Made by a program: the position numbers and the translations under genes. A stretch of 64,000 bases of DNA from Pristiophorus japonicus. Taxonomy: Eukaryota. The notes under the pieces were generated by a model, which was given only the letters and a program-made list of their open reading frames with translations, ran no database searches and was not told where the DNA came from. Positions 6,414-64,000 of this stretch are shown here, piece after piece (position 1 is the stretch's first letter; each line of letters begins with the position of its first letter). The stretch spans positions 48,236,001 through 48,300,000 of the forward strand of contig NC_091979.1 of assembly GCF_044704955.1 (NCBI RefSeq). The letters are read 5' to 3'.

Positions 6414-6706
6414 ATAAGAGGGTGGGGGAAGTGGCTGCAGCTAAAGTTTGTTTGCTGCTGTTGTTGTTGTTGTTGTTGTGCTGTTCTTTTGTTCTTTTAT
6501 TGTTATTTAAGTGATGTTAATTTAAAAGTTTAAAGTTTAATATAAATGTTTTTCTTAAAATTAAGTACAAGTGTACAAATGTTTAATAAACTGCAAATTA
6601 TTTTTTCGACTAAACCAAACTTATGTAATGCCTCATTTGCAAAATAACAGGTGGAAATAGTCAACATGGTGGAATACAGTGGGCAGTCCATGATGAAACG
6701 TGCCGT

Positions 6707-22762: not shown

Positions 22763-23828
22763 ATAGAAATGTTTGTCTTTTTAACAGAAATGGGTGCAGC
22801 CAGATTGGGAGCAGTATGTTTAACCAGCGATTATTGGACCATTAACTCTCCATTCACCGCCTGGCAGAGAGCCAGAAAATCTTCTTTTGTCATTTTTGCT
22901 TGCTAACTGCTCATCTAGTCTTTTGTTAATAAATAGGTCGATATGTTTTGAAAAGATGAATTATATGTGAGAAATGATACAATCAGCACCATTGTGTTAA
23001 TATGCTTCATGTTTGCAGAAAAGCATGATTCAGATCAATATATCCACAAGAATGCTCACTCTGCCATTGTGAGTTTAAAAAAAGAGTCAAACTTTAAATT
23101 CACATTACCATGGAAGTTAAACATTACAAAAGGTCAAGATACTGTGCTATATATTTCACTTGATGCCCTCAATTTTACACAGAGGTCACAATCAAAGCTC
23201 TTTAAACATCACTGGGCAAACATGAAGCATATTAACACAGCTGTGCTAGGCAACAAAGAGACACTAAAGTCACTTGGTTGTAAAACTACAGGTTTACTGG
23301 TAAGCTAAGCTTCGAATAAATTTACCCACTGCTATCTTCTGCACATATCCAGCTGGAAGTAGAGGTCAGCCTGGACACAGAAATATCAGAACTCCCAACC
23401 CTAAAATAATGTCAGTTCAGAAACTAGGCCCCAAGTTTCGTGCCGCGGCGAAAACGGCACACCTCCGAGCTGGGCGCCTGTTTTTCGCGCCGAAAACTGC
23501 GCCTAAAAAAAAATCCGATATTCTCAAGCTCCTTGGAGCTCGATGTCTGCTTGGTGCGGCGCGCTCTTCGCAGCAGGGGGCGGAGCCTAACACTGGCGCC
23601 GATTTTCTAAGCAGCAGGGGGCGGGTACAATTTAAATTAGCCTTCGTGGTGCCGGCAACCCTGCGCGTGCGCGTTGGAGCGTGCGCGCACGCGCAGTCTC
23701 ACACAAACATTGGCACTCGGCCATTTTTAAAAATACTGCAGAAAAAGTGAAGATTTGTTTCTTGGACCCCTGCAAAGGCTTGTAATTTAATTTTTTTTGA
23801 TATTTCTGTGTGTGAGGGAGTGCTTTTA

Positions 23829-23935
23829 ACTCTTTTAGAGTCTACCTGCAAAAACATAAAACATTAAATCGTGCCACCCAACCTGGGTGACACACCAGAC
23901 ATTTACAAGGCCCTTTTTTTTCCTTTTTTTTTTGG
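23829..23935 (-). mobile_element. 107-bp retroposed insert (L1/Tx1-type signature) with a 15-bp TSD
   Basis: GAGGGAGTGCTTTTA duplicated at 23814-23828 and 23936-23950. Target ends in TTTT/A. Confidence 0.7.
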
Positions 23936-24091
23936 GAGGGAGTGCTTTTAGCAGCACTGCTGAATAAATCACCTGCTGAAATCAGTGAGTTCAGCTTTTC
24001 ACTGCTAAACTTGCAGAACCGGTGCTGCATCGGTGCATGCAAATTAAGGACTGTGTGTTTGGAGAAATAAGAGTGCCAATTCAACTTTGCA

Positions 24092-24720
24092 ATGGATCAA
24101 CGTCCACCAAGAACAAAGAATTTCTCGCATGAGGAAGTGGAGATATTAGTCAACGTAATTGAGCAGAGATGGCAGGAGCTAGATACCAGCAACAGAGGTC
24201 ACATAAAAGTGCCACCAAAAGAAATGAAGAAACGCTGGAACCAGGCAGCAGGTTGATTTAAGGGGCCATGATGCATTTTCAGGACTTACCCTCTTCCTCG
24301 CATGCTGCACCACAGTCCCAGCCTGCGCCTCCCTGTGTAATGGTGCCGCTTGCAACACCAAGCATCCCACCGTCCGTGCCCGTGCCTCCCAGTGTAGCGG
24401 TGCCACAAGGCAGACCCAGGCAGAGGAGCAGGAGATTGGAGGCACACTCTCCTGAGATGCAGCGTGCAACAGATGCGGCTCAGGTTGTGGCATTGGGTAT
24501 GGAGACCAATGAGCTTACCCGATCACTCATCGGTGGCGTCAGTGCAGTAGGTGAAGAGTTGACGGTCCTGACAGGAGAAATAGCAGTAATGACACGGGAA
24601 CTTAGGAAGGGAATGTCCGAGGGAGTGCAATCGACGGCACAGGCCGACAGGGAGGGCCTGGTTGAGGTAGGTGCTGTAATAAGGGCACACAGCCCAGCCA
24701 ATCAAATGACACCCCCATGA
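24092..24720 (+). pseudogene. Harbinger Myb/SANT-like gene with internal deletion
   Basis: MDQRPPRTKNFSHEEVEILVNVIEQRWQEL...KKRWNQ (24092-24244) is joined directly to last-exon sequence (SPEMQ...LTRSL) homologous to 5790-6413. Confidence 0.8.
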
Positions 24721-24826
24721 GGAAGTGAACATTCACTGAGATATGGATGAGACATAGTTGCAGCCTTTCTTTGCTGCTTTTGTTCTTGTTCTTGATGTAG
24801 CTGTAGTAGAGTTTTTCAAATTGAAA

Positions 24827-25400
24827 TTGTTTTGTAAGTTTTGTAACTTTACAACTTATAAGGGATCTTATGGTTTTTAAGTGATCTTATAGTGTAAATG
24901 CTCTCACATTTTTTTGTATCTTATTTAATTTTGCACCTAAAAAGTGATCCTGAAGTTTAAGTGTTCTTCAGAGTGTAAGATTTTTCACAATGAAACTGTT
25001 TTGTAAGTTTTGTAACTTTACAACTTATAAGGGATCTTATGATTTTTAAGTGATCTTATAGTGTAAATGCTCTCACATTTTTTTGTATCTTATTTAATTT
25101 TGCACCTAAAAAGTGATCCTGAAGTTTAAGTGTTCTTCAGAGTGTAAGATTTTTCACAATGAAACTGTTTTGTAAGTTTTGTAACTTTACAACATATAAG
25201 TGATCTCAGGGTTTTCAAGTGATCTTATAGTGTAAATGCTATCACCTTCTGTAAATTATTTAATTTTGCAACTAAAAAGTGATCTTGAAGTGTAAGTGAT
25301 CTTAGAGTGTAAAATTTTTCACATAGAAAGTGTTTTGTAACTTTTGTAACTTTACAAGTTTATAAGTGATCTTAAAGTTTTGAAGTGATCTTCAAGAGTC
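24827..25400. repeat. Tandem repeat, ~169-bp unit x ~3.4, AT-rich
   Basis: GTTTTGTAA unit starts at 24829, 24998, 25167 and 25332. Internal AAGTGATCTT subrepeats. Confidence 0.9.
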
Positions 25401-25567
25401 ATATTAAAAAGTATAGTTTGATACAACAAATATTTTATTACAGTGACGTTAACTTTTCAATAAAATATTTTTTCATTAAAACTGTTTCATGTTCCAGTAA
25501 CACAACACAACGTAGGAACAACTGCAAAGAATAAACATGTCCATATGCAAAAGTGGTCGCAGAGCCC

Positions 25568-26790
25568 TCAGGCATCAGTAGTTGAAGCGTTCACGGATGA
25601 GCTGCTGGCGCAAGTCTCGAGCAACGTTAAAGGGGCATGATGGACGGCCCTCCTCCGACCTCGTGCTCCGGCATCAGGCACTTGCATGCTTTCCTGATTG
25701 TCGTTATCATCCACATCCTGGTCTTCCGTAATACTATCATCATGCACTGGACCCTCACATCGGTCTTCTGGTTCCACGACCAGCTCCTGCTGCCTTATGA
25801 TGGCTAAGTTATGAAGCATGCAGCACACAACAGTGAAGTGACTGACAATCTGAGGAGAGTATTGCAACTGTCCTCCGGAATGGTCCAGGCATCGGAATCG
25901 CTGTTTCAATATGCCAATGGTCCTCTCAATGATGCTGCGCGTCGCAATGTGCGCCATGTTGTATTGACGGTCAGCTTCTGTCCGTGTCACGCGTATGGGC
26001 GTCATGAGCCAGGTGGTCAAGCCGTACCCTTTGTCTCCCAGTAGCCAGCTATGCCCTTCTGGCTGCTGCTCAAACATGTCAGATAGAACGCTGTCGCGTA
26101 GGATGAATGCATCGTGGGTGCTGCCAGGGTATCTCGCGTCGACTGACATGATGCGCTGCTTGTCGTCACACACGAGCTGCACATTGATAGAGTGGAAACC
26201 TTTCCTATTTCGGTACTGCTCAGATTCCTTCACGGGCGCTCGCAAGGCTATGTGGGTACAATCAATGCAGCCCTGTACCTTTGGGAAGCCGGCAATCCTG
26301 AAGAAGCCCACAACCCTCTCATGGATCGCTTGTGCGGTCATTGAGAAATTGATGAAGTCATTCCTTCGCGCATAAAGTGCAGCCGTGACCTGGTAAATGC
26401 AGGCATGTATTGCACGTTGAGAGATGGCACACACATCTCCAGTTGTAGCCTGAAACGATCCCGAGGCATAGAAAGAAAGTGCAGCTGTTACCTTCCCTTC
26501 AACAGCCAAGGCAGTGTCCTTCTGCTTCTGGGCTGCAAATCTGCTCTCACCATATCACAGATCTCAGTGACAACTTCTCTGCGAAAACGCAGCCTTTTCA
26601 CACAATCAGCCTTGCTCATGTCCAGGTACGAGCGCCTGGTTCAATATTGTCGGCGTGGGCAAGGTCTCCTGCCCATCAACCTACGGGCTACGACGTTCCT
26701 GGTGTGGTGAGCTCTAATCAATTCTCTCCTATGCAGTGAATTGATGGCAAACCATTGCATAATACGTGGTGTTGACAATACAGCACCCAT
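25568..26790 (-). pseudogene. Harbinger DDE transposase, nearly intact
   Basis: ATG 26790 (MGAVLSTPR) follows acceptor TTTGCAG. TGA at 26641-26643 and a frameshift at ~26515. Then a 313-aa ORF with CIDCTH, YPGSTHDAF, GDKGY, IERTIGILKQRF. Confidence 0.93.
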
Positions 26791-26836
26791 TCTGCAAATT
26801 TAAATATAAAACTGTCGATGTGGCTGCCTCTCCCTG

Positions 26837-27138
26837 TCCAAATGGCCTCAGTCCCCCTCACAGCTCGAAGGCTGCTGCTGTATCTTTGGCTGCCGGCCAG
26901 CCACTGACGCCGCCCCTAAAGCATGGCCGAATGGCCTCAAGCACCATAAAGAGCTGCGTGTGTCCTGCGTTGATTCTTCGGCTGCCGGCCAGCCACTGAC
27001 ACCGCTGCTATCTCATGGCCGAATGGCCTCACGTCGGTCCGCTGATTCTTCGGCTGCCGGCCAGCCACTGACGCCGCTGATATCTCATGGCCGAATGGCC
27101 TCGGGTCCGTCCGGTGCTGCTTCTTCGCGGCCAGCCAC
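26837..27138 (+). repeat. 62-bp direct repeats separated by variable spacers
   Basis: Repeats at 26877-26938, 26969-27030 and 27041-27102, plus partial copies. Each ends ATGGCCGAATGGCCTC. Spacers are 27, 30, 10 and 13 bp. Confidence 0.85.
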
Positions 27139-27984
27139 GAAGAGAATGAAGGCCTGCCTCAAGCACTGCAGCTCAGCTCAAAGCTTGCTGCCGCTGCCGT
27201 CGAGACACTGACGCCACACCCCCGCCTGTCTCCAACATGAAAGGCCTGCCTGAAGCACTTTCACTCAGGTAGGAACATGGTTTATTTAATCTTTTCTTTG
27301 CTTATAAATTTTTATTCAGGTTGGATTTATTTGTATAATATTTGTATAAGTATAACTAAGGATTGATTGTAGAATTTAATGACTTCCCTTCCCCCCCTCA
27401 CCTCGTTCCCTACACCTAATTTGTAACCTACACCTGATTTTCTAAAGTGTAGACAAGGTTTTTTCGAGCGTACAAAAATCTTCACTTACTCCATTCTAAG
27501 TTAGTTTGGAGTAAGTTTTCACTCACGAAACTTTGAAATCAGGCGTAAGTGGCCGGACACGCCCCCTTTTGAAAAAAAAATTCTGTTCCAAAGTGAAACT
27601 GTTCTACCTGACTAGAACTGGAGCAAACTAAATGTGGAGAATTCCGATTTCTAAGATACTCCGTTCTACACCAGTTGCTCCTAAAAATCAGGAGCAAATC
27701 ATGTGGAAACTTGGGGCCCTAGATGTGAAACATAATTTACAACTTGGAAAGGTACCGGGCACAAGGTAGTATTATTGTTTCATTTGGTGAACAGTGTGCT
27801 CTTAATGGTGGGAGACATCAGTTCTAATGGGGAACAGGCATTTTTCCCCACACTCACTGTATCAGCGTTCCTCGGTTAGGTGGAGCATGAGTTAGGTGCA
27901 GTAAAACGTCTCCCAAAAAGTGTCTCAAAAACGTACCCTTAGCCCTAATGGCAGAAAAGCATCAGTGTAAATATTTTCATTGCT

Positions 27985-38100: not shown

Positions 38101-38430
38101 AAGCAGGAAGGGGGTACTGAAGTTTCATGTTCAGCCATGAACTCATTGAATGGCGGTGCAGGCTAGAAGGGCTGAACGGCCTGCTCCTGCACCTATTTTC
38201 TATGTTTCTATGTTTCTATTCTGAATCGTAGTGGAGCCCACCATCAGTCCAAGAAACAAAGCTGAAGTGTTTGCCAAAAGGGCCAAGTGGATGATCCTGC
38301 CAGACATCTCCAACATTATAGATGGCAATGCCCAGCCATTTTGGCATTAAGGAATATGACACTAAGAAAAGGTTGAGTGCACTGAACACAACAAAGGCTA
38401 TGAGCCCCGACAGCATCTCGGCATTAGTTA
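35115..38430 (+). mobile_element. Old LINE of a second family (35115-35384 and 38221-38430), split by CR1
   Basis: ACQEQHQAYLRM...MNITI before the CR1 continues as LN..GA after it. TSD ATT at 35382-35384 and 38218-38220. Confidence 0.7.
35385..38217 (+). mobile_element. Young CR1, 5'-truncated just inside ORF2; remaining ORF2 uninterrupted
   Basis: Open from NKYDVIGITETW to the stop at 38120 (~910 codons) with all EN/RT motifs downstream of the junction. (TTCTATGT)n tail. Confidence 0.96.
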
Positions 38431-38934
38431 CATCGAGCTCAAAATTGGCCAGGAGTTGCTCCGTTTTTTTTGGAGCAACTTGATTTTTCTGGAGTATCTT
38501 AATAACCCCCATTTTGCACCAGTTAGTTAGTGAGTTAGTTGGGATTTTTTTAGTTTAGTTTTTTTTTCAAAAGGGGGCGTTACCAGCCACCCACGCCTGT
38601 TTTGGCCATTTAGGCCACTTTGGCCAGTTAACAGTTACTCCAAACTAACTTGTGGCCGCTTGTGAAAACCGGTGGGGAGAGATAAGAAATCAGAGCAGGT
38701 AGGTACATCGGAGGCCAGCAAAACTTAATGACTCGATTAAAGAATGTGAATAGGATCAAACAGCTATACAGAACATCATATGATAAACTTCGCAAAGTTA
38801 ATTTACTATACAACAGAAGCATTCATGGAAGCTTAAACGACAAAAATAAAAGAAATAAAGAGACAAAACATACTTACATAATTTTTTTCAAAATATCCAA
38901 GTAAGTCCTACCCTACCTTCATCTTCAGCCCAGG

Positions 38935-39530
38935 AACATTACAGATTACTATAAACACTGACAGCAGCCAGTAACAATCAATCAAACCAAATGAAGATCC
39001 AGAATGGGGATTGCTTCTGAATGTATCCTTCCAGCGACGCAGCAAGTCCAGATTCCAGTCCCGGCGACCTTCACTTCGGGACCAGCCTCAGGCCTGCACT
39101 GATGAGTTCGAGGATGATTCTCCTTTTTCAGCAGGGTTTGCTGGGCTGTAACCAGATTTCTTCTCTCCTCCTCTCTTCTTCCACATAACGCCACCGATGA
39201 CCAGAGCAATCAGGGTGACGGCAGCAATCACAATTCCAACAATCAAACTGAGATTTGTTCCCTTTGGGGATCCTGGAGTCACTCAGAATGTCCCGTCCAA
39301 GTCTCAGTTCTTCACTCCTGTGTTGCCACTCTGCTCATACTGACAGGAATAGGTGGCTCCATGCTCGGACTCAATCTCAGCCCATCTTGTCAGCTGGTAG
39401 GTTCCGTCCTGGTTGGGCAGAATGCCACTGGATTCCGTGTCCGTGATCGGCTCGCGATTTCTCAGGAGGGTGATTTCGATATCACGAGGGTAAAAACCCG
39501 TGACTAGAGACAAGAGAGTTGGGTCAATTT
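38935..39530 (-). pseudogene. Intronless MHC class I heavy-chain fragment: alpha3 (Ig C1), TM, cytoplasmic tail, 3'UTR
   Basis: KLTQLSCL[+2 nt]VTGFYPRDIEITLLRN...GILPNQDGTYQL...YSCQY, then in the same frame after two TGA stops LIVGIVIAAVTLIALVIGGVMWKKR...GYSPANPAEKGESSSNSSVQA*. No introns between domains. Confidence 0.9.
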
Positions 39531-39584
39531 GGCCACTTGGCCTGGGATAGGGGCGGGACGCACACAGAGATGCTGAGGGCGAGG

Positions 39585-39675
39585 AGCTACTGCGCATGCG
39601 CGCACACTCCAACGTGCATGTGCAGACATCCTGGCACTGTTTTCAGCTCCGGACGCTGGCTCCGCCCCCGACTCG
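39585..39675 (-). promoter_or_regulatory. MITE internal promoter-like motifs (GC box, NRF1-like)
   Basis: GGGGCGGAGCC and GCGCATGCGCA on the minus strand. The GC box and degenerate NRF1-like motif recur at 62241-62330 and upstream of the Myb gene in element #2. Confidence 0.55.
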
Positions 39676-39794
39676 ACTGGCCACGCTGCGCGAAGACCCG
39701 GGACTAATTTTTTCGGCGCACTTAGAAACGAAGAAAAGCTGCGCAACTCGGGTGAGTGCGCCAAAAATCGGCATGGCCCAATTTTGAGCCCATT

Positions 39795-43883: not shown

Positions 43884-46165
43884 GGGGTCAAGTTTCTGCC
43901 TGAGTTGCTTCTATTTTTTTGGAGCAACTAATTTAGAATGGAGTATCTTAGAAATTGCAATTCTCGGCCTTTAGTTTGCTCCAGTTCTAGTGAATTAGAA
44001 CAGTTTCATTTTAGAACAGATTTTTTTTTCAAAAGGGGGCATGTCCGGCCACTAACGCCTGTTTTGTAAGTTTAGGCTGCGAAAACTTACTCCAAACTAA
44101 CTTAGAATGGAGTAAGTGCGGATTTCTGTACGCTCAGAAAAACCTTGCCGACACTTAGAAATCAGGCATATGGAACGAAAGATGGTGGGGGGGGGGGGGG
44201 GAGGAGGTTTACAAACATTAAACACTTCACTTTTACAAATAAAGAGCCATCATCAATATTAAATGATAAATAAACCAATAAATAAACCAAATCAATCCAA
44301 ATAAATTAAAAAATTAAAAGTTATAAAAAAATTAAAAATCATTCAATAAATAAAAAATTATTTCTACTCACCTTCTGCAGCACCAGGGAGAAGGGGGGAA
44401 GAGAAGAAGATAGGGGGGAGAAGGGAGGAAGATGGGGGGAGAAGGGAGGAAGATGGGGGGGAAAGAGAGGAAGATGGGGGGGAGAAGGGAGGAAGATGGG
44501 GAGAAAGAGAGGAAGATGGTTGGGCGAAGGGAGGAAGATGGGGGGGAAAGAGAGGAAGATGGGGGAGAAGAGAGGAAGATAGGGGGGGGAAGAGAGGAAA
44601 ATGGGGGGAGAAGAGAGGAAGATGGTTGGGAGAAGGGAGGAAGATGGGGGGGAAAGAGAGGAAGATGGGGGAGAAGAGAGGAAGATAGGGGGGGAAGAGA
44701 GGAAGATGGTTGGGAGAAGGGAGGAAGATGGGGGGGAAAGAGAGGAAGATGGGGAGAAGAGAGGAAGATAGGGGGGGGAAGAGAGGAAGATGGGGGGAGA
44801 AGAGAGGAAGATGGGGGGAAGAGAGGAAGATGGGGGGAGAAGAGAGGAAGATGGGGGGAAAGAGAGGAAGATGGTTGGGAGAAGGGAGGAAGATGGGGGG
44901 AAGAGAGGAAGATGGGGGGGAAGAGAGGAAGATGGGGGGGAAGAGAGGAAGATAGGGGGGGAAGAGAGGAAGATGGTTGGGAGAAGGGAGGAAGATGGGG
45001 AGAAAGAGAGGAAGATGGGGGGGAAGAGAGGAAGATGGGGGGGAAGAGAGGAAGATGGGGGGGAAGAGAGGAAGATAGGGGGGGAAGAGAGGAAGATGGT
45101 TGGGAGAAGGGAGGAAGATGGGGAGAAAGAGAGGAAGATGGGGGGGAAGAGAGGAAGATGGGGGGGAAGAGAGGAAGATGGTTGGGAGAAGGGAGGAAGA
45201 TGGGGAGAAAGAGAGGAAGATGGGGGGGAAGAGAGGAAGATGGGGGGAAGAGAGGAAGATGGGGAGAAAGAGAGGAAGATAGGGGGGAGAAGAGAGGAAG
45301 ATGGGGGGAAGAGAGGAAGATGGGGGGGAAGAGAGGAAGATGGGGGGGAAGAGGGGAAGATGGGGGGGAAGAGAGGAAGATGGGGGGGGAAGAGAGGAAG
45401 ATGGGGGGGAAGAGAGGAAGATGGTTGGGAGAAGGGAGGAAGATGGGGAGAAAGAGAGGAAGATGGGGGGGAAGAGAGGAAGATGGGGGGAAAGAGAGGA
45501 AGATAGGGGGGAGAAGAGAGGAAGATGGGGGGAAGAGAGGAAGATGGGGGGGAAGAGAGGAAGATGGGGGGGGAAGAGAGGAAGATGGGGGGGAAGAGAG
45601 GAAGATGGGGAGAAAGAGAGGAAGATAGGGGGGAGAAGAGAGGAAGATGGGGGGAAGAGAGGAAGATGGGGGGAAGAGAGGAAGATGGGGGGGAAGAGAG
45701 GAAGATGGGGGGGAAGAGAGGAAGATGGGGGGGAAGAGAGGAAGATGGGGGGGGAAGAGAGGAAGATGGGGGGGGAAGAGAGGAAGATGGTTGGGAGAAG
45801 GGAGGAAGATGGGGAGAAAGAGAGGAAGATGGGGGGGAAGAGAGGAAGATGGGGGGAAAGAGAGGAAGATAGGGGGGAGAAGAGAGGAAGATAGGGGGGA
45901 GAAGAGAGGAAGATAGGGGGGAGAAGAGAGGAAGATTGGGGGGAAGAGAGGAAGATGGGGGGGAAGAGAGGAAGATGGGGGGAAGAGAGGAAGATGGGGG
46001 GGAAGAGAGGAAGATGGGGGGGAAGAGAGGAAGATGGGGGGAAGAGAGGAAGATGGGGGGGAAGAGAGGAAGATAGGGGGGAGAAGAGAGGAAGATGGGG
46101 GTGGGGGGGAAGAGAGAAGACGACGAAGGAGAAGCCCCGCACGCAGCCGATGCCGGGCTGCCGAC
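43884..46165 (-). mobile_element. Harbinger MITE lacking its promoter end, with minisatellite cargo
   Basis: TIR GGGGTCAAGTTTC at 43884. Arm homologous to 27270-27718 (reverse complement). Donor AAG|GTGAGT at 44371. Confidence 0.82.
44388..46115. repeat. Polypurine minisatellite, ~19-21-bp unit (GGGGGGAAGAGAGGAAGAT variants)
   Basis: Direct inspection: ~1.7 kb with higher-order blocks of variant units. Confidence 0.97.
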
Positions 46166-46485
46166 ATCTCATACGTCAGTCCTGCCATCCCGGAAATCAG
46201 TCTGGTGAACCTTCGCTGCACTCCCTCAATAGCAAGAACGTCCTTCCTCGGATTAGGACACCAAAACTGAACACAATATTCCAGGTGAGGCCTCACCAAG
46301 GCCCTGTACAACTGCAGTAAGACCTCCTTGCTCTTATACTCAAATCCCCTAGCTATGAAGGCTAACATACTATTTATCTTCTTCACCGCCTGCTGTACCT
46401 GCATGCCAACTTTCAATGACTGATGTACCATGACACCCAGGTCTCGCTGCACCTCCCCTTTTCCTAATCTGCCGCCATTCAGATT
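46166..46485 (-). mobile_element. Internal CR1 fragment without a tail
   Basis: LNGGRLGKGEVQRDLG...LTYE, abutting the MITE. Confidence 0.9.
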
Positions 46486-54689: not shown

Positions 54690-55492
54690 TTCGGCACTTA
54701 ACCTTTTCCAGTTCTGACTAAAGTTCATCGATCTAAAATGCTAATTCTGTTTCTCTGTCCAGAGATGCTGCCTGACATGCTAAGCATTTCAGATTTCCAG
54801 CATCCGCAGTTTTTTGCTTTGTTGCATAGACTAGGTTTGTATTCTCTTGAATATAGAAGATTACGCGTGATAAAATTGAGGCATTTAAGATGATTAAAGG
54901 ATTTGATAGAATGGATAGAGAGAAACTATTTCCTCTGCTGGAGGAGTCCAGAACAAGGGGGCATAACTATAAAATTAGAGCTAGGCTCCTCAGGAAACAC
55001 AAAGGGTAGTGGAAATTTGGAGGCTTGCGATCAATTGAAAATTTCAAAACTGAGATTGACAGATTTTTTGATAAACTAGCGTATTAAGGATTACAGAACC
55101 AAGACAGGTAGGTGGAGTTAAGATACAGATCAGCCATGATCTAATTGCATGGAGGAACATGCTTGAGGGGCCGAATGGCCTATGTTTCGAGGTTGTCATT
55201 TGGACTGGCCACACCAGCTGCAGGACTTCATGTGAACTGGTCAAACTGCAGTCTAGTTAGTCCAGTGGTAATTGCAGAAGTGGTATACTGTATGAAGCCT
55301 GTGCGGCAGGAGGAGTAAGTATGGTAAGGGCACTCCCATAGTGCTGCTAGGGAGGGAATCTGTGGGAGTACCCTTACCATGGACTGCAGTGGTTCAAGAA
55401 GGCAGCTCACCACCACCTTCTCAAGGGCAATTAGGGATGGGCAATAAATGCTGGCCTTGCCAGTGACGCCCATATCCCACGAATGAAAAAAA
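54690..55492. mobile_element. Cluster: Penelope-like end, CR1 3' fragment (+), second-family LINE tail (+)
   Basis: Similarity to other copies in this window. Confidence 0.6.
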
Positions 55493-56889
55493 CAGTTGAT
55501 GCATCTTTCAGACCTTGATGGTTCCTTAATGCGTACCTTTTTCAATTACTCATAAAATATTTGAAGGGAATGGTAGTCTGCTGCACAGCTTGGGAATCAA
55601 TGCTTAGTAGTCTTGTTAAGTCTTGCTAGTCTCGCCCACAGTCGAGCTCCATAAATAAGGACCAATCACTGATGGGATTTACATGTATATTTAACTTTCC
55701 TTTTAAATAATAACTCTTCTTGTATCACGGTGACAGAATAAATTCATAATATTAATTAATATCAATTTTCATTGGCATATTTGTGGCTTATTTAAAAAGT
55801 TGATGATACTGATTTGAGTTTGTAAATTTTTTGATGAATAGTAATGAAATATTTGAGGGCGAATTAAGTCTCCTTAATGCTGCAGTACTTTCACAATCAA
55901 AGTGATACAATACCACATCAAAGAAAAGCAATTATTGAAAGCCGCACCTTTACTGTATTTAATGTTTTTGATTGTTATTGTGGAATGCGCAAAATATTTT
56001 CAAATTACACCAACACTTATCTCGTGTCTAATTCTAGGAAAGCATCATGTGGAACAGCTTTCATTTAATCACTTCTACAAACGATTGTAATTGTCTCCTA
56101 CATTACAACAGTGACTACATATTAAAAGTACTGCACCGAGTGTAAAAACGCTTTGGGGAGATTTGATATCGTGAGAGGGACTATCTCAATGCAAGTTCTT
56201 TCTTTCTAGAAAGCATTTTTAAAATATCTTAGTTCGACTAAAGTTAAAGTTATAATTAAGGAATAGTTGTCATATTTATTGCAGAGAGTGGACTGAAAAT
56301 TATGATGATGTTTGAACAGACATTTTTTTAAAGGGGTTATCTGAAGCTAGAAATATGTTAATTAGCATTCTTTTCATTTCTGAGCAATTTCAACTTTGAT
56401 GAGGCTGAATGAAACTTGCATTTGTGGTGTGATTAATCAGCTAGTACATTTCAGCTGGTAAATTTCCTCCATTACAACAGTGACTACATTCCAAAAGTAC
56501 TTAATTGGCTGTAAAATGCTTTGAGACGTCGGGTGGTTGTGAAAGGCGCAATATAAATCCACATCTTTCTTTCTTTCTAGTAACTGTCCTGGTTAAGTAA
56601 ATCTGAAAGCTAGCCTTCGAAATAATCATACAAAAATGATATACTGTTTCACATTTCAACTGTTAGTTCCAAGATCCAAACAAACATCTTCTCAGATATG
56701 CTTCATCTGCTCCAACACAATGAAAGGAGTAGCTTCAAGCAGATGTTGGAAATCTGAAATATAAACAGAAGATGCAGGTGAGGCAGCATCTGTGGAGAGA
56801 GGAAGGTAGGGTTAACATTTCAGCTTTGTGAACTCATCCCTTTTTGGTGCGGAAGGAAGTAATCCTCGATACGAGGAACCACCTAAGAA

Positions 56890-57300
56890 GATTAAGAATT
56901 AGGAGCAGGAGTAGGCCATTCGGCCACATGAGCCTGCCTCGCCATTCAATAAGATCATGGCTGATCTACCTCAACTCCACTTTCCTGCACCGTCCCTGTA
57001 TCCCTTGATTCTCTTAATATTCAAAAAACTATCGATCTCTGTCTTGAATATACTCAAAGACTGAGTGTCCACAGCCCTCTGGGGTAGAGAATTCCAAAGA
57101 TTCACCACCCTCTGAGTGAAGAAGTTTCTCCTCATCTCAGTCCTAAATGGCCAACCCCTTATTCTGAGACTGCGACCCCTGGTTCTCGACTCCCCAGCCA
57201 GGGGAAACATCCTCCCTGTATCTACCCTGTCAAGCCCTGTAAGAATTTTGTACTTTTCAATGAGATCACCTCTCATTCTTCTTAACTCTAGAGAATAGCT
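56890..57300 (-). mobile_element. CR1 3' fragment
   Basis: MRGDLIEKYK...RRNFFTQRVVNLWN and tail. Confidence 0.9.
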
Positions 57301-57554
57301 TGATCTGTGGTTAAAAAAAAAATTCCGTGTAAAGATGTTATTACAGGTTTACTTTAAAATCACTTTACCATGGAAATCAGAATAGATTCAGGTAAGTGGG
57401 TGCCATCAAATTCAGATCAAAGGCTTCACTTACATTTTACATGAGGCCAAAATTATATATCCTCATATTTGTGGGTGGAGTACATAGCAGTGAGGCAGAA
57501 CACCGATGATTCATTTCCACAGAATGGAACAGGTGGAGCTTCACTCGGGTCTCG

Positions 57555-58100
57555 CACAGTTTGGGTCTCCTTATTTAAGGAGGGATATACTTGCATTGGA
57601 GGCAGTTTAGAGAAGGTTCACTAGATTGATTCCTGAGCTAAAGGGGTTGACTTATGAAGAAAGGTTGAACAGGTTGGGCCTTTACTCATTGGAGTATAGA
57701 AGAATGAGAGGTGATCTTATTGAAACATATAAGATACCGAGGGGGCTCGACAAGGTAGATGCAGACAGGATGTTTCCCCTCGTGGGGGAATCTAGAACTA
57801 GGGGGGCATAGTGTAAGAATAAGGGATCGCCCATTTAGAACTGAGAAGAGGAGGAATTTCTTCTCTCAGAGCGTTGTAAATCTGTGGAATTCTCTGCCCC
57901 AGAGAGCTGTGGAGGCTGGGCTATTGAATATATTTAAGATGGAGATAGACAGATTTTTGAATGATAAGGGAGTGAAGGGTTATGGGGAGCAGGCAGGGAA
58001 GTGGAGCTGAGTCCATGATCAGATCAGTCATGATCTTATTGAATGGTGGAGCAGGCTCAAGGGGCCAAATGGTCTATTCCTGCTCCTATTTCTTATGTTA
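57555..58100 (+). mobile_element. CR1 3' fragment
   Basis: LTYEERLNRLGLYSLE... and tail. Confidence 0.9.
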
Positions 58101-58549
58101 TGTCTCAATCTGAATCGTCGGAGGGTGCAATGTCTCTTTGCAGAGTAAAATCGGGGAGAATCCAAACTGCGGAGGGTGGGGTTTGCAAAGTCATGCCAGA
58201 TGGTACTCGGCACCTCTGGCTGGTGGCTACAGGGGCTCAAAGAGAAGCCTGCGTGCACCAAACTTTGCTTGCCATCATCCAAATGTTGGTAAAAAAATGT
58301 TACTGAGAAAGTGAGTGTCGTGCCAGCTGTTCACTAATATTCTAATATCCGAAACCTCGAAGATAATCCAGTGGGTCACCCGAGCAATGCTTAAATTTTA
58401 AAATTAAGGTTGGTTTTTGCACCAGTTGCAATTATGCTGCAGCCTGCCTGAAGCTGGAGCAGTGTGAGACTACCTCCTGTAGGCAGTCTCACACCCAAGG
58501 CCACATCCAGAACTAATGCTGATTTAGTTGTGGTCGCACTGTACATATT

Positions 58550-59090
58550 GGGCCTGAATTTGCCTCTGAACGACAATAAAATGACAAACCTACCTGATGG
58601 ACCTAAATCCATGTAGACCTGTGCTCCTGGGCCTCTACGCGTAGACCTGTGTAGAGCTCCATGTATCCCAGGGACGCATGCAGTTTGCAAGTATCCCTGG
58701 GATGACGTGGGCCAGCCCAACCAATCAGAAAGGGGATACAATTACGGTTATGGGGATTCCATTTATGTACGGAACCCCCGTAAGCTTAATACGAATCACC
58801 CAAAAAATACATTTTCACAACACTGAAATTTAAAAAAAAAATCATTACATGTTTGAAATTAATTAAAATACAATTTAAAACAAATTTAATTTTTTGAAAA
58901 ATAAATGTAAACATTTTTCAAAGGGGCCACAAATAACACAAACTTATTTAGCAGGTTTTCGAATGCTAAAATTATTTTTTAAATTTTATTTTAATATGTA
59001 TTTAGACACGCTGGTAAAAGAAGGCCCTAATCCTGCTTTTATCAGGTGTAAGAGTTTCACGGGCATTCACTGAGCATTGGTTGGACAAAT
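58550..59090. mobile_element. Harbinger-type MITE, left part, interrupted by CR1
   Basis: Starts GGGCCTGAATTTG. Internal hairpins at ~58750-58780 and ~59005-59049. Other TIR not in the window. Confidence 0.5.
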
Positions 59091-59513: not shown

Positions 59514-60446
59514 ATGGCAGGAGAGCTCAGACTCATGTCATGCTCCTCCTGTGCTATGTGGAAAATCAAGTGTCCCTGACTACTATGTGTGCGGGAAGTG
59601 TGTCCAGCTGCAGCTCCTGACAGACCGCATGACGGCACTGGAGCTGCGCATGGACTCACTCTGGAGCATGTGCGATGCTGAGAATGTTGTGGATAGCACA
59701 TTTAGTGAGTTGGTCACACCACAGGTAAGGGTTAGGACAGATAGTGAATGGGTGACCAAGAGACAAGGCAAGAGCAGGAAGGTAGTGCAGGAATCCCCTG
59801 TGATCATCTCCCTCCAAAATAGATATACCGTTTTGGATATTGTTGGGGGAGATGACTTACCAGGGGAAGGCACCAGCAGCCAGGTTCATGGCACCATGGG
59901 TGGCTCTGCTGCACAGAAAGGCAGGAAAAAGAGTGGGAGAGCTATAGTGATAGGGGACTCTATTGTAAGGGGAATAGATAGGAGTTTCTGCGGCTGCAAC
60001 CGAGACTCCAGGATGGTATGTTGCCTCCCTGATGCAAGGATCAAGGATGTCTCGGAGCGGCTGCAGAGCATTCTGGAGAAGGAGGGTGAACAGCCAGTTG
60101 TCGTGGTACATGTAGGTACCAACGATATAGGTAAGAAGTGGGAAGAGGTCCTACAAGCTGAATTTAGGGAGCTAGGAGTTAAATTGAAAAGTAGGACCTC
60201 AAAGGTAGTAATCTCTGTATTGCTACCAGTGCCACATGCTAACCAGAGTAGAGGGAGCAGGATAGTTAGAATAAATACATGGCTTGAGCAGTGGTGCAAG
60301 AGGGAGGAATTCAAACTCCTGGGATATTGGAACTAGTTCTGGGGGAAGTGGGACCTACACAAAAGGGACGGTTTGCACTTGGGCAGGACTGGAACTGATG
60401 TCCTGGGGGTAACATTTGCTAATGCAGTTCAGGAGTGTTTAAACGA
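59514..60446 (+). pseudogene. CR1 ORF1: zinc finger/leucine zipper plus SGNH/GDSL esterase, disrupted
   Basis: CSSC...CGKC, IGDSIVR, VHVGTND, DGLHL. Frameshift near 59565 and TAG at 60334. Confidence 0.88.
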
Positions 60447-62091
60447 ATATGGCAGGGGGATGGGAACCTATGCAGCGAGACAGGGCGAAGTAATATGGAG
60501 TCAGAAACAGATGGTAGAAAGGTAAAAAGCAATAGTGGAAGGCCGAGTAAACAAAGGCAAGAAACAAAAAGGGCCACACTACATCATAATTCTAAAAGGA
60601 CAAAGGGTGTTAAAAAAACAAGCCTGAAGGCTTTGTGTCTTAATGCAAGGAGTATCGGTAATAAGGTGGATGAATTAACTGTGCAAATAGATGTTAACAG
60701 ATATGATGTAATTGGGATTACAGAGACGTGGCTCCAGGTTGATCAGGGCTGGGAACTCAACATCCAAGGGTATTCAACATTCAAGAAGGATAGAATAAAA
60801 GGAAAAGGATGTGGGGTAGCATTGCTGGTTAACGAGGAGATTAATGCAATAGTTAGGAAGGACATTAGCTTGGATGATGTGGAATCTATATGGGTAGAGC
60901 TGCAGAACACCAAAGGGCAAAAAAACGTTAGTGGGAGTTGTGTACAGACCTCCAAACAGTAGTAGTGATGTTGGGGAGGGCATCAAACAGGAAATTAGGG
61001 GTGCATGCAATAAAGGTGCAGCAGTTATCATGGGTGACTTTAATATGCATATAGATTGGGCTAACCAAACTGGAAGCAATACGGTGGAGGAGGATTTCCT
61101 AGAGTGCATAAGGGATGGTTTTCTAGACCAATATGTCGAGGAACCAACTAGGGGGAAGGCCATCTTAGACTGGGTGTTGTGTAATAAGAGAGAATTAATT
61201 AGCAATCTCGTTGTGCGAGGCCCCTTGGGAAAGAGTGACCATAATATGGTGGAATTCTACATTAGGATGGAGAATTAAACAGTTAATTCAGAGACCATGG
61301 TCCAGAACTTAAAGAAGGGCAACTTTGAAGGTATGAGGCGTGAATTGGCTAGGATAGATTGGCGAATGATACTTTAGGGGTTGACAGTGGATGGGCAATA
61401 GCAGACATTTAGAGACCGCATGGATGAATTACAACAATTCTACATCCCTGTCTGGTGTAAAAATAAAAAAGGGAAGTTGGCTCAACCGTGGCTATCAAGA
61501 GAAATCAGGGATAGTATTAAAGCCAAGGAAGTGGCATACAAATTGGCCAGAAATAGCAGCGAACCCAGGGACTGGGAGAAATTTAGAACTCAGCAGAGAA
61601 GGACAAAGGGGTTGATTAGGGCAGGGAAAATAGAGTACGAGAGGAAGCCTGCAGCGAACATTAAGACAGACTGCAAAAGCTTCTATAGATATGTAAAGAG
61701 AAAAAGGTTAGTAAAGACAAACGTAGGTCCCCTGCAGTCAGAATCAGGGGAAATCATAACGGGTAACAAAGAAATGGCGGACCAATTGAACAAGTACTTT
61801 GGTTCGGTATTCACTGAGGAGGACACAAACAACCTTCCGGATATAAAAGGGGTCAGAGGGTCTCGTAAGAAGGAGGAACTGAGGGAAATCCTTATTAGTC
61901 GGGAAATTGTGTTGGGGAAATTGATGGGATTGAAGGCCGATAAATCCTCAGGGCCTGATGGACTGCATCCCAGAGTATTAAAGGAGGTGACTTTGGAAAT
62001 AGCGGATGCATTGACAGTCATTTTCCAACATTCCATGGACTCTGGATCAGTTCCTATGGAGTGGAGGGTAGCCAATGTAACTCCACTTATA

Positions 62092-63495
62092 GGGCCCAAG
62101 TTTCCACAAGAAAAAAACGGGCGCCCCTCCGAGCTGGGCGCCCGTTTTTCGCGCCTAAAACGGCGCCTAAAAAAATCCTCGGTATTCTCCACCTACTTAC
62201 AGGTCTTCTGGCAGTCGGCGCAGCCAGCACGAGCTGTGTGGGGGGCGGAGCCAGGTCCCGGCGCTGAAAACAGTGCCGGGACCTCTGCACATGCGCGCTA
62301 CAGTCGGCACGCAAGTGCAGTAGCTCCAGGCGCCGAACTGTGTGGGAGGGGCCCGAAGCACGCAGCCCCTAACCCTGGCTGAATGGCCTCACTGGGGCTG
62401 CGTCAATGAGGCTCCTCCCACAGCCAGCTCCTGCTCCCCGCCCGACCAGACCCGACACTCGCTCCCCCCCCCCCACCCCCGCCGACCAGACCCGACACCC
62501 GCTCCCCCCCCGCCGACCCGACCCGAGACCCGCTCCCCCCCCGACCCGACCCGAGACCCGCTCCCCCCCCCCCACCGACTGACCCGACACTCGCTCCCCC
62601 CCCCCCCCCGCCGACCAGACCCGACACTCGCTCCCCCCCCCCCACCCCCGCCGACCAGACCCGACACCCGCTCCCCCCCCGCCGACCCGACCCGAGACCC
62701 GCTCCCCCCCCGCCGACCCGACCCGAGACCCGCTCCCCCCCCGCCGACCCAACCCGAGACCCGCTCCCCCCCCCCACCGACTGACCCGACCCGCGCTCCT
62801 GTGACCCGACACCCCCCCCTCTCTCCTCACCCCCCCTCCGCTCTCTCCTCACCCCCCTCCGCTCTCTCCTCACCCCCACCCCCGCTCTCTCCTCACCCAC
62901 CCCCTCTCTCTCCCTCCCCCCCCTCCGCTCTCTCTCCCTCCCCCCCTCCGCTCTCTCTCCCTCCCTCTCTCTCTCTCTCTCTCCCCCTCCCGCTCAGCGG
63001 CACGAACGGCTGCAGAATTCTCCCTGGCTGAAGCACTTTCACACAGGTAGGAAGATGGTTTATTTAATCTTTTCTTGGCTTATAAATGTTTATTTAGTTG
63101 GATTTATTTGCATAATATTTGTATAAGTATAAATAAGGATTTATTGTAGAATTTAATGAGTTCCCTCCCCCCCCCCACCTCGTTCTGGACGCCTAATTTG
63201 TAACCTGCGCCTGATTTTTTAATGTGTAGAACAGGTTTTTTCAGTTCTACAAAAATCTTCACTGGCTCCGTTCTACTTTAGTTTGGAGTACATTTTCACT
63301 GTGGAAACTTTCAAATCAGGCGTCAGTGGCCGGACACGCCCCCTTTTGAAGAAAAAATTCTGTTCTAAACTAGAACTGTTCTACCTGACTAGAACTGCAG
63401 AAAAAAAAATGTGGAGAATTGCGATTTCTAAAATAGTCCGTTCTCCACCAGTTGCTCCTAAAAATCAGGCGCGAATCATGTAGAAACTTGGGCCC
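62092..63495 (+). mobile_element. Harbinger MITE inserted in CR1 ORF2
   Basis: TIR GGGCCCAAGTTTC / GAAACTTGGGCCC. 3-bp flanks ATA/ATT; removing the element and one copy restores CR1 spacing. Right arm highly similar to 27247-27718. Confidence 0.93.
62435..63000. repeat. C-rich minisatellite (CCGACCCGACCCGAGACCCGCTCCCCCCC variants) followed by CT-rich repeats
   Basis: Direct inspection. Confidence 0.95.
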
Positions 63496-64000
63496 ATTAA
63501 AAAAGGAGGGAGAGAGAAAACAGGGAATTATAGACCGGTCAGCCTGACATCGGTAGTGGGTAAAATGATGGAATCAATTATTAAGGATGTCATAGCAGCG
63601 CATTTGGAAAGAGGTGACATGATAGGTCCAAGTCAGCATGGAATTGTGAAAGGGAAATCATGCTTGACAAATCTTCTGGAATTTTTTTGAGGATGTTTCC
63701 AGTAGCGTGGACAAGGGAGGACCAGTTGATGTGGTGTATTTGGACTTTCAGAAGGCTTTCGACAAGGTCCCACACAAGAGATTAATGTGCAAAGTTAAAG
63801 CACATGGGATTGGGGGTAGTGTGCTGACGTGGATTGAGAACTGGTTGGCAGACAGGAAGCAAAGAGTAGGAGTAAATGGGTACTTTTCAGAATGGCAGGC
63901 AGTGACTAGTGGGGTACTGCAAGGTTCTGTGCTGGGGCCCCAGCTGTTTACATTGTACATTAATGATTTAGACGAGGGGATTAAATGTAGCATCTCCAAA

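What the first reader, a model, noticed from the sequence alone, without database searches (positions are those of the whole stretch)
62092..63495. Fixed cargo-slot architecture shared by the Harbinger MITE family
Related copies have conserved arms but unrelated interiors. The left boundary motif is GCCCCTA-n-GGC(C/T)RARTGGCC (62365-62390; 39531-39553 minus; 26912-26938). The right boundary is CTGAAG...AG|GT (63028-63048; 38915-38928 minus; 27250-27270). Slot content is a C-rich minisatellite (62391-63020), MHC cDNA (38935-39530), a 1.7-kb minisatellite (44388-46165, left boundary lost) or a repeat-spacer array (autonomous copy). Inference: a dedicated hypervariable or acquisition site rather than random internal deletion. 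This is the best candidate for an undescribed system in the window.
Basis: partly seen in the sequence, partly recalled or inferred. Interest (0 to 1): 0.82.

Follow-up and report, generated by a model that had tools for sequence, protein, structure and literature searches.

The report
Variable middle of shark Harbinger transposons
A very abundant small cut-and-paste transposon of the Japanese sawshark keeps its two ends constant and varies in the middle, mostly because its own unstable repeat region expands and only occasionally because foreign DNA is pasted in, so it is an ordinary transposon feature and not a new cargo-loading system.

Summary
The motifs and coordinates are real. Four copies of one PIF/Harbinger family share their arms: a dead autonomous copy A (23427-27718) and the non-autonomous copies B, C and D. 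They differ between a hairpin-bearing motif (GCCCCTA..GGCCGAATGGCC) and CTGAAG..AG|GT.

The middles are not four unrelated cargoes.
- The "slot" is the element's own region just upstream of the transposase start codon. In A it is a degenerate 72-bp tandem array.
- C and D still carry native anchors from that region. They are C/T-rich minisatellite expansions of it.
- Only B holds foreign DNA: an intron-free piece of an MHC class I mRNA, cut at both ends and without poly(A).

Contigs of four public runs show a very abundant family. Its arms are 10-100 times deeper than D's middle. The left edge fades over about 70 bases past the motif and does not stop right after it.

Best reading: this is an unstable, dispensable core between ends that transposition needs. 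It expands by slippage and is occasionally patched with reverse-transcribed filler during break repair. That is Pack-type behaviour, not a dedicated acquisition system.

The scan had already noted this family, with similar verdicts, on other DNA of this genome. A genome-wide census of junctions could not be run here.

The parts
62092..63495 (+). Copy D: complete non-autonomous Harbinger element inserted in a LINE reverse-transcriptase gene. TIRs are GGGCCCAAGTTTC at 62092-62104 and its complement at 63483-63495. The flanking triplets are ATA and ATT.
   Evidence: Other copies of the LINE in the reads lack the insertion and read CCACTT|TTTAAAAAAGG (joints and loose ends at 62088 and 63497).
62092..62360 (+). 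D left arm: TIR, then a GC box (GGGGCGGAGCC) and a GCGC-rich palindrome block ending in GCAGTAGCTCC. It looks like a promoter by sequence only.
   Evidence: Alignment A1. Homologous to A 23427-23712 and to B 39791-39555 (minus strand).
62361..62402 (+). D two-tier hairpin. The outer stem pairs CGCAGCCCC with GGGGCTGCG. The inner stem-loop is GGCT-GAAT-GGCC.
   Evidence: Fold: -29.8 kcal/mol, z -2.6, 3 of 200 shuffles fold as well. Most of the family reads GGCCGAATGGCC here (62380 T>C in 73% of depth).
62403..63027 (+). D variable core. It runs: native sequence past the hairpin, minisatellite 1 (31-40-bp units, 62436-62799), a native anchor (62799-62828), minisatellite 2 (22-bp units, 62812-62995), then a native lead-in ending in TTCTCCCTGG.
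   Evidence: TRF. Anchor to A 27206-27235. The core is 63% C and holds 10 of the window's 14 G-quadruplex-type motifs. Depth profile.
63028..63495 (+). D right arm. It starts with CTGAAGCACTTTCACACAG|GTAGG and contains the most conserved block of the family (GTGGCCGGACACGCCCCCTTTTGA, 63326-63349).
23427..27718 (+). Copy A: dead autonomous Harbinger element. TIRs are GGCCCCAAGTTTC and its complement, with a perfect 3-bp target duplication CTA/CTA.
25578..26799 (-). A transposase gene (DDE_Tnp_4). It is about 89% identical to residues 116-523 of a Pristiophorus japonicus 'HARBI1' protein, with one in-frame stop and a frameshift. The likely start codon is at about 26790.
   Evidence: Pfam E 8e-40. 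Homologue search. tblastn.
26837..27249 (+). A native 'slot': about four degenerate 72-90-bp units. Three carry GGCCGAATGGCC (26925, 27017, 27089) and one a decayed copy (about 26838). A 110-bp tail follows. The region lies just upstream of the transposase start codon, on the strand opposite to that gene.
   Evidence: TRF period 72, 87% matches. Motif contexts. Alignment A5. Frames carry no coding signal.
24092..24253 (+). A remnant of the Myb/SANT-like second gene.
   Evidence: Pfam Myb_DNA-bind_5, E 9e-4, 19.6 bits, which is below the curated cut-off; first half of the domain only.
38435..39791 (-). Copy B: divergent non-autonomous element with both ends (GGGCTCAAAATTG and its complement). 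The flanking triplets are AAT and GAT.
38935..39527 (-). B foreign cargo: an intron-free internal piece of an MHC class I mRNA, covering part of alpha-3, the connecting peptide, the transmembrane segment, the tail and part of the 3' UTR. It has internal stops and no poly(A). It replaces the whole native core, from 0-3 bases after the inner stem-loop to about 8 bases before CTGAAG.
43884..46167 (-). Copy C: right arm (43884-44336), boundary CTGCAGAAG|GTGAGT (44380-44366), a 20-bp minisatellite repeated 83 times (44393-46101) and a native left edge (46122-46167). The left arm is missing. The break lies about 5 bases before the decayed inner stem-loop and abuts a 317-bp internal LINE fragment (46168-46484).

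Best explanation
The "slot" is a native, dispensable and structurally unstable part of this Harbinger family. It is not a loading device.

Where it comes from:
- In the autonomous element it is the stretch between the right arm and the transposase start codon. It consists of a few degenerate 72-bp tandem units, each with a small GGCC-GAAT-GGCC stem-loop, followed by a C/T-rich tail.
- An old internal deletion joined the promoter-like left arm directly to this stretch and made the short element. That junction is shown by its presence in both B and D.

How it varies:
- In the descendants the stretch changes mainly by expansion and contraction of tandem repeats. C and D are shown to keep native anchors.
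- Rarely, the whole core is replaced by filler DNA when a break is repaired. B shows this replacement: a spliced internal mRNA piece without poly(A). This is the signature of repair by capture of a reverse-transcription product.

Why the borders look fixed (inferred):
- Copies damaged in the arms can no longer be mobilised, so only changes in the core are amplified.
- Hairpins, G-rich runs and pyrimidine mirror repeats at the core's edges are where replication or repair synthesis copying inward from each end would stall.
For: - The slot lies just upstream of the transposase start in A.
- B and D share the junction between the left arm and the hairpin; A continues into the Myb-like gene instead.
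- D's core matches A's slot as the top hit of 2,520 windows, and 0 of 300 shuffles reach the score.
- C's left edge matches the spacer of A's third unit as the top hit of 4,904 windows, 24/31 identical.
- D's second minisatellite aligns with C's minisatellite (72.7% over 128 bases, E 2e-9). Both cores are pyrimidine-rich on the same element strand: 75% in D and 94% in C.
- The A array is an ordinary degenerate tandem repeat.
- The family is very abundant, with about 55,000 contig pieces per DNA run. Its arms are 10-100 times deeper than D's core, and D-like C-rich core sequence is still present at 1-10% of arm depth.
- The left edge fades gradually: 787k, 396k, 155k and 76k between 62380 and 62459.
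- B's cargo is spliced, cut at both ends and lacks poly(A). This matches break repair by captured RT products as described in PMC4516963.
- Two independent rearrangement junctions, in B and C, lie within about 5 bases of the inner stem-loop.
Against: - Only four copies could be read base by base, and only one holds foreign DNA. Statements about the fixedness or spread of capture junctions therefore rest on a single event plus a coarse depth profile.
- The depth profile sums short contigs and is not a copy count. Its gradual left edge could partly reflect where contigs break.
- The right edge is sharp at bin resolution (about 10-fold between 62972-63025 and 63026-63079). A passive model predicts this less clearly.
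- The origin of D's first minisatellite from the native unit was not supported.
- Stalling of repair synthesis at the hairpin or G-rich tracts is inferred, not shown.
- Unchecked notes of this scan report further spliced cargoes (MHC class II alpha and other host genes) at the same place in other copies. If these are independent events they favour a true hot spot.
Confidence: 0.6

Rival explanations
1. Structure-directed capture hot spot. The hairpin at the left edge shares its core with the 3' hairpin of the genome's CR1-like LINEs. It would recurrently attract breaks or the LINE reverse transcriptase, so that reverse-transcribed host mRNAs are inserted again and again at this one place. Loaded elements would stay mobile.
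For: - GGCYRARTGGCC occurs 17 times in the window against 0.04 expected. Twelve of these are in CR1-like LINE 3' hairpins and five in Harbinger copies.
- D folds into the same two-tier shape as the LINE hairpin.
- B's cargo junction and C's truncation both sit at the inner stem-loop.
- B's cargo is spliced, so a reverse transcriptase was involved.
- Unchecked scan notes list MHC class I, MHC class II alpha and other host fragments in middles of this family.
Against: - A covariance model built from 12 LINE hairpins finds 18 LINE ends at 26-68 bits. It matches the Harbinger sites only locally on the 14-base inner stem-loop (14.0 bits, E 0.21; D 11.9 bits, E 0.82).
- Flank similarity is not significant, and no octamer tail follows the hairpin.
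- There is one foreign cargo in this window.
- Family depth does not drop right after the motif.
- The hairpin lies 5' of the cargo in the mRNA sense. That is the wrong side for target-primed reverse transcription that starts at a recognised 3' hairpin.
- An earlier follow-up on another piece (s1-874693) also judged the capture point 'not exact'.
Confidence: 0.15
2. The region is a functional transcription unit and the boundaries are RNA signals. There are two versions. In the first, the short element is a portable promoter plus first exon that ends at a splice donor (AG|GTRRG on the element's plus strand), and the body of that non-coding exon is free to vary. In the second, read on the other strand, the right boundary is the pyrimidine tract plus CAG acceptor of an intron in the transposase 5' UTR.
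For: - All four copies keep AG|GT(A/G)(A/G)G at the right boundary although the surrounding sequence has diverged. C has the consensus AAG|GTGAGT.
- The complement reads as a pyrimidine tract plus CAG in B and C, and faces the transposase gene in A.
- The left arm has a GC box and a GCGCATGCGCA-type palindrome just before the core.
- B's cargo is in sense orientation relative to the left arm.
Against: - No RNA evidence is available. All four runs are kept as contigs, which cannot show starts, ends or strand, and no joint at 63046 was among those listed.
- The two strand readings cannot be told apart from sequence.
- A functional exon would explain tolerance of variation but not its source.
Confidence: 0.15
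3. Chance resemblance or assembly artefact: the shared motifs are coincidental, or the variable middles are mis-assembled repeats.
For: The minisatellites are hard to assemble. Reads were skipped at 62867-62998.
Against: - The motif patterns have 0-0.02 chance expectation.
- The arms align over hundreds of bases.
- Two DNA runs hold 73-78% of the stretch's sampled words, though the best holder may be the sample the window was assembled from. Four runs, from at most three samples and two studies, carry arm sequence in tens of thousands of contig pieces.
Confidence: 0.02

Closest known systems
Tourist-like MITEs and other internally deleted PIF/Harbinger elements (for example mPing with Ping/Pong)
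   Same: Short non-autonomous derivatives that keep the terminal and subterminal sequence of an autonomous partner. The partner encodes a DDE transposase and a Myb-like protein. The elements have a 3-bp target duplication and very high copy number.
   Different: These copies are longer (1.4-2.3 kb) than classic MITEs. They keep a promoter-like left arm and carry a tandem-repeat core that expands to 0.6-1.7 kb.
Pack-TYPE transposons (Pack-MULE, Pack-CACTA and the Pack forms of hAT, Harbinger-PIF and Mariner surveyed in plants; PMC8903248, PMC6379663)
   Same: A non-autonomous TIR element with a host gene fragment between intact ends (copy B). Capture is ascribed to repair or replication errors, not to a dedicated enzyme.
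   Different: The host is a shark, whereas transduplication is described mainly in plants and is called unknown in animals in PMC2572040. The cargo is a spliced mRNA piece, not genomic DNA. Only one of the four copies here is loaded.
[quoted passage not shown] 2015, PMC4516963)
   Same: Captured pieces are internal parts of mRNAs, lack introns and lack poly(A) tails. B's MHC piece shows all three features.
   Different: There the breaks were made by Cas9 in mouse zygotes. Here the break is inferred, lies inside a transposon, and the patched element may since have transposed (scan notes, unchecked).
CR1-clade LINE 3' hairpin plus octamer microsatellite, thought to be the recognition site of the LINE's reverse transcriptase (PMC8665684)
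   Same: The inner stem-loop GGCC-GAAT-GGCC is identical, and in D it is enclosed by an 8-10-bp outer stem of similar geometry.
   Different: There is no octamer tail and the flanks are unrelated. The covariance model of the LINE hairpins does not extend beyond the inner 14 bases.
Dedicated acquisition sites (integron attI with its integrase, CRISPR leader with Cas1-Cas2)
   Same: Superficially, a fixed position where different sequences are found, and a repeat-plus-variable-part array in copy A.
   Different: There is no dedicated recombinase. A's variable parts are related to one another. Most of the 'cargoes' are the element's own sequence, and the junctions are not nucleotide-exact across the family.

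Membership tests
PIF/Harbinger superfamily (autonomous partner and derivatives) | DDE_Tnp_4 (HARBI1/PIF-type) transposase in the autonomous copy | tested here: met
   Pfam PF13359, E 8e-40. About 89% identity to residues 116-523 of a P. japonicus 'HARBI1' protein.
PIF/Harbinger superfamily (autonomous partner and derivatives) | Second gene encoding a Myb/SANT-like DNA-binding protein | tested here: inconclusive
   24092-24253 matches Myb_DNA-bind_5 at E 9e-4 and 19.6 bits, below the 21.7-bit cut-off. Only half of the domain is present.
PIF/Harbinger superfamily (autonomous partner and derivatives) | Short terminal inverted repeats flanked by a 3-bp target duplication | tested here: met
   A has 13-bp TIRs and CTA/CTA. 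D has ATA/ATT and B has AAT/GAT, each 2 of 3 matching.
Pack-TYPE transposon | Host gene fragment lying between both ends of a non-autonomous TIR element that has no transposase | tested here: met
   Copy B only: C1-set domain at E 4e-13 plus a transmembrane segment and tail between both arms. Not met for C and D, whose middles are native repeats.
Pack-TYPE transposon | Loaded element mobilised after capture (several copies with the same cargo at different sites) | not testable with these tools
   There is only one loaded copy in the window. Scan notes s1-877184, s1-879000, s1-874499 and s1-878456 report more copies but were not checked here.
Dedicated site-specific acquisition system | Independent foreign inserts joined at the same nucleotides | tested here: not met
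   One foreign insert in the window. Family depth declines gradually over about 70 bases past the motif. The genome-wide junction census was not possible.
Dedicated site-specific acquisition system | An encoded enzyme that performs the acquisition | tested here: not met
   A encodes only the transposase and a Myb-like remnant. Its other ORF (24268-24717) has no Pfam match.
CR1-like LINE 3' hairpin | Full two-tier hairpin that scores with a model of the genome's own LINE hairpins | tested here: not met
   Model R1 gives 26-68 bits for LINE ends. Harbinger sites match only model positions 18-31, at 11.9-14.0 bits and E 0.2-0.8.
CR1-like LINE 3' hairpin | Octamer-type microsatellite tail directly after the hairpin | tested here: not met
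   LINE ends carry TATTTTCTATGTTTCTATG. The Harbinger sites do not, and 3' flank similarity is not significant for A (contexts).

The most novel reading that the evidence does not exclude
The hairpin-bounded core of this sawshark Harbinger family is a recurrent hot spot where reverse-transcribed host mRNAs (MHC class I, MHC class II alpha and others) are captured independently. Capture might occur because a mimic of the CR1 hairpin recruits the LINE reverse transcriptase or stalls synthesis there. The loaded elements would then amplify, giving a vertebrate 'Pack-Harbinger' that spreads spliced pieces of immune genes.
Probability: 0.15. Interest if true: 0.7.

Novelty: new member of a known kind. 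Interest (0 to 1): 0.3.

Why it matters
If the reading is right, the "slot" needs no new mechanism. It shows how a structured repeat region inside a very abundant shark transposon produces minisatellites and, now and then, carries a host gene fragment. This is useful for repeat annotation of shark genomes and for avoiding false MHC pseudogene calls.

It would matter more if a genome-wide census showed many independent captures of spliced cDNA at the hairpin. Transduplication by DNA transposons is rarely documented in animals. A hot spot linked to a LINE-like hairpin would connect DNA-transposon and retrotransposon machinery.

Tried and rejected
- **More copies from other sharks.** P. japonicus proteins in the collection carry no contigs.
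- **Metagenome scan.** A scan for the most conserved right-arm block gave 0 hits.
- **Rfam.** Nothing in the window reached gathering score.
- **Homology of the Harbinger hairpin to the CR1 hairpin.** The covariance model matched only the inner 14 bases, and flank alignments were not significant. It is not filed as a CR1 hairpin.
- **Origin of D's first minisatellite from A's 72-bp unit.** It looked similar by eye, but the unit's best matches in the window are other C-rich tracts. Dropped.
- **Short right-edge pieces of B and C on their own.** Not significant against the window background. Homology of the right arms rests on the long alignments.
- **Coding reading of A's slot.** No open frame on either strand.
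- **N-terminal Myb part of the P0001 protein.** Not found in this window.
- **Search for C's missing left arm beyond the LINE fragment.** Nothing above background.
- **Splice-donor versus acceptor reading of the right boundary.** Cannot be decided from sequence. The single read-laying run returned contigs only.

Full report
**What is there**

The window is repeat-dense vertebrate DNA. The transposase of its Harbinger copy is 90% identical to a protein of Pristiophorus japonicus, the Japanese sawshark. Most large ORFs are LINE reverse transcriptases or endonucleases.

One PIF/Harbinger family is present in four copies that have arms:
- **A**, 23427-27718, plus strand. It has 13-bp TIRs and a perfect CTA/CTA duplication.
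- **B**, 38435-39791, minus strand.
- **C**, 43884-46167, minus strand, with its left arm missing.
- **D**, 62092-63495, plus strand. This is the finding's own copy. It sits inside a LINE reverse-transcriptase gene, and other copies of that LINE in public reads lack the insertion.

An older transposase relic lies at about 5924-7910.

Copy A is a dead autonomous element:
- DDE_Tnp_4 transposase on the minus strand, 26799 to 25578, with one stop and a frameshift.
- A weak, half-length Myb/SANT-like remnant at 24092-24253 on the plus strand.
- A 169-bp tandem repeat between them.

**Check of the observation**

- The left pattern occurs three times, only in A, B and D.
- The right pattern occurs three times, only in A, B and D.
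- C has CTGCAGAAG|GTGAGT at the homologous place.
- The arms align over hundreds of bases.
- The listed contents are also right: minisatellites in D and C, a 72-bp array in A, and in B an MHC class I piece. The B piece has a C1-set domain (E 4e-13) running without introns into a connecting peptide, a transmembrane segment, a tail and 3' UTR. It has internal stops and no poly(A).

**What the "slot" is**

In A the region between the two boundaries (26837-27249) lies directly upstream of the transposase start codon (about 26790), on the opposite strand. It consists of about four degenerate units of 72-90 bp. Three carry GGCCGAATGGCC, and a 110-bp tail follows. The variable parts of the units resemble one another, so this is a decaying tandem repeat and not a repeat-spacer array.

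B and D share the same junction between the promoter-like left arm and the first unit (GCCCCTA..GGCC-N4-GGCC). A continues at that point into its Myb-like gene. The short element therefore arose by one old internal deletion upstream of the left motif.

**The interiors are mostly not foreign**

- The best match for D 62790-62835 in the whole window, on both strands and excluding D, is A's slot. Its score is 17 against a background of 6.4 ± 1.8. A 27206-27235 matches D 62799-62828 at about 21/25, and 0 of 300 shuffles reach the score. The second-best match is C's minisatellite edge.
- The best match for C's left edge (46167-46122, minus strand) in the whole window is the spacer of A's third unit (27096-27127, 24/31). 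Its score is 17 against 6.2 ± 1.3.
- C and D also share the sequence just after the hairpin (GGCTGCGT..GGCT.CTCC) and TTCTCCCTGG just before the right boundary.
- D's second minisatellite aligns with C's.
- Both cores are pyrimidine-rich on the same element strand: D is 63% C and C is 94% pyrimidine.

So A, C and D hold one native region in different states of tandem expansion. Only B holds foreign DNA. It replaces the entire native core, from 0-3 bases after the inner stem-loop to about 8 bases before CTGAAG.

**Family-wide evidence**

I laid the contigs of four public runs of the same organism on 62000-63600 at 80% likeness or more.
- About 55,000 to 59,000 pieces were laid per DNA run, so the family is very abundant.
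- Summed depth is 0.6-1.2 million on the arms.
- It is still 0.56 million in 62378-62431, then 0.09 million in 62432-62485. It falls to about zero by 62864-62971, where repeats were also skipped.
- It is 0.12 million in 62972-63025 and 1.15 million from 63026 on.
- Point depths in run X1 are 787k at 62380, 396k at 62404, 155k at 62422 and 76k at 62459.

Three conclusions follow.
- The middle is indeed variable across the family.
- About half of the summed depth runs through the whole hairpin and beyond, and the left edge fades over about 70 bases. It does not stop after GGCCGAATGGCC.
- D-like C-rich core sequence persists at 1-10% of arm depth, so D's core is a feature of the family and not a unique cargo.

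The right edge is sharp at bin resolution. These figures are sums over short contigs and are not copy numbers. The tool listed only the best-supported loose ends, so a base-level histogram of junctions could not be made.

**The hairpin**

GGCYRARTGGCC occurs 17 times in the window against 0.04 expected. Twelve occurrences are the inner stem-loop of the 3' hairpin of CR1-like LINEs, which is followed by a TATTTTCTATG-type tail. The outer stem of that hairpin covaries, as is known for CR1 elements (PMC8665684).

D folds into a similar two-tier hairpin at 62361-62402 (-29.8 kcal/mol, z -2.6). The family majority restores the perfect inner stem.

However, a covariance model built from the 12 LINE hairpins finds 18 LINE ends at 26-68 bits. 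It matches the Harbinger sites only on the inner 14 bases (11.9-14.0 bits, E 0.2-0.8). The flanks are not significantly similar. I therefore record a shared 12-14-mer and a similar shape. I do not claim membership or homology.

B's cargo junction and C's truncation both lie within about 5 bases of this stem-loop. That is suggestive of breakage there, but it is only two events.

**Mechanism**

Shown:
- The native origin of the region.
- The shared old deletion.
- Native anchors in C and D.
- One replacement by a spliced mRNA piece without poly(A).
- Family-wide variability with a graded left edge.

Inferred:
- The core changes by replication slippage and unequal exchange.
- Its hairpins, G-quadruplex-prone strand and pyrimidine mirror repeats stall replication or the repair synthesis that copies inward from each end after excision.
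- Stalled or broken intermediates are joined directly or with filler. In B the filler was a reverse-transcription product, as in RT-product-mediated break repair (PMC4516963).
- Copies damaged in the arms are not mobilised, which makes the borders look fixed.

This is how internally deleted and Pack-type TIR elements are generally thought to arise (PMC8903248, PMC6379663).

**The right boundary**

AG|GTRRG is kept in all four copies, which fits a plus-strand splice donor. The complement reads as a pyrimidine tract plus CAG facing the transposase gene, which fits an acceptor in the transposase 5' UTR. Sequence alone cannot decide between these, and no RNA evidence was obtainable.

**Relation to earlier notes of this scan**

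All these notes are unchecked leads.
- The same family was noted on other DNA of this genome. s1-874693 reports 'Pack-Harbinger' copies with GGCCGAGTGGCC, and its follow-up judged the capture point not exact.
- s1-877304 reports GC-rich minisatellites at an internal site.
- s1-877184 and three first-reader notes report MHC-class-I-loaded copies.
- s1-877413 reports a spliced MHC class II alpha piece.

My results agree with the first two. The others, if they are independent events, would raise the odds of a real hot spot. I could not test them.

**Limits**

- The one read-laying run and the one run search are spent.
- The public DNA collections on hand do not hold this genome.

**Verdict**

The finding is a new family of a known kind, namely Harbinger non-autonomous elements with an unstable tandem-repeat core and occasional Pack-type capture. 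Interest is 0.3. The most novel reading still open is a recurrent hot spot for cDNA capture at a LINE-like hairpin, with probability about 0.15.

Noticed in passing
window 4971-5015, 15451-15495, 31915-31959, 38152-38196, 49770-49814, 53704-53748 (-), 58045-58089 and 11 more: Eighteen 3' ends of CR1-like LINEs carry a two-tier hairpin whose inner stem-loop is GGCCGAATGGCC and whose outer stem covaries between subfamilies. A TATTTTCTATG-type tail follows. Rfam has no family for it.
   Followed up: yes
window 39800-39844 (-): A decayed LINE 3' hairpin (15.2 bits, E 0.1) lies 9 bases beyond B's left end (39791). B therefore sits in the tail of a CR1-like LINE. The LINE sequence CTGTGCTGTAGA runs up to the element.
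   Followed up: partly
window 46168-46484 (-): A 317-bp internal piece of a LINE reverse-transcriptase gene is joined to copy C about 5 bases before its decayed stem-loop. The piece is in sense orientation, ends at ..GLTYE, and lacks the LINE 3' end. It is unclear whether this is a deletion junction or captured filler.
   Followed up: partly
window 5924-7910 (-): A second, older Harbinger transposase relic. It is 66% identical in protein to the P. japonicus HARBI1-like protein, has several stops, and has no recognisable arms.
   Followed up: partly
window 26785-26800 (-): The sawshark protein model P0001 fuses a Myb_DNA-bind_5 N-terminus (residues 1-115, not encoded in this window) to the transposase. 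The fusion point coincides with an acceptor-like tttgcag|A just before the ATG in copy A. This is either a real spliced fusion in another copy or a gene-model artefact.
   Followed up: partly
window 24812-25392: A 169-bp tandem repeat (3.5 copies, 91% matches), AT-rich, lies between the two genes of the autonomous copy. It is a second tandem-repeat region inside the same element.
   Followed up: no
window 59551-60333 (+): An ORF with weak matches to the GDSL-lipase and OSK domains (E 9e-7 and 1e-5, both below the curated cut-offs) lies upstream of the LINE reverse transcriptase that D interrupts. From my own knowledge, not tested here, it could be an esterase-type LINE ORF1.
   Followed up: no
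window 27487-27514 and homologous places in C (about 44087-44115): An inverted pair ACTTACTCC..GGAGTAAGT in the right arm of A and C gives a GTAAGT donor-like site on both strands. It is not kept in B or D.
   Followed up: no
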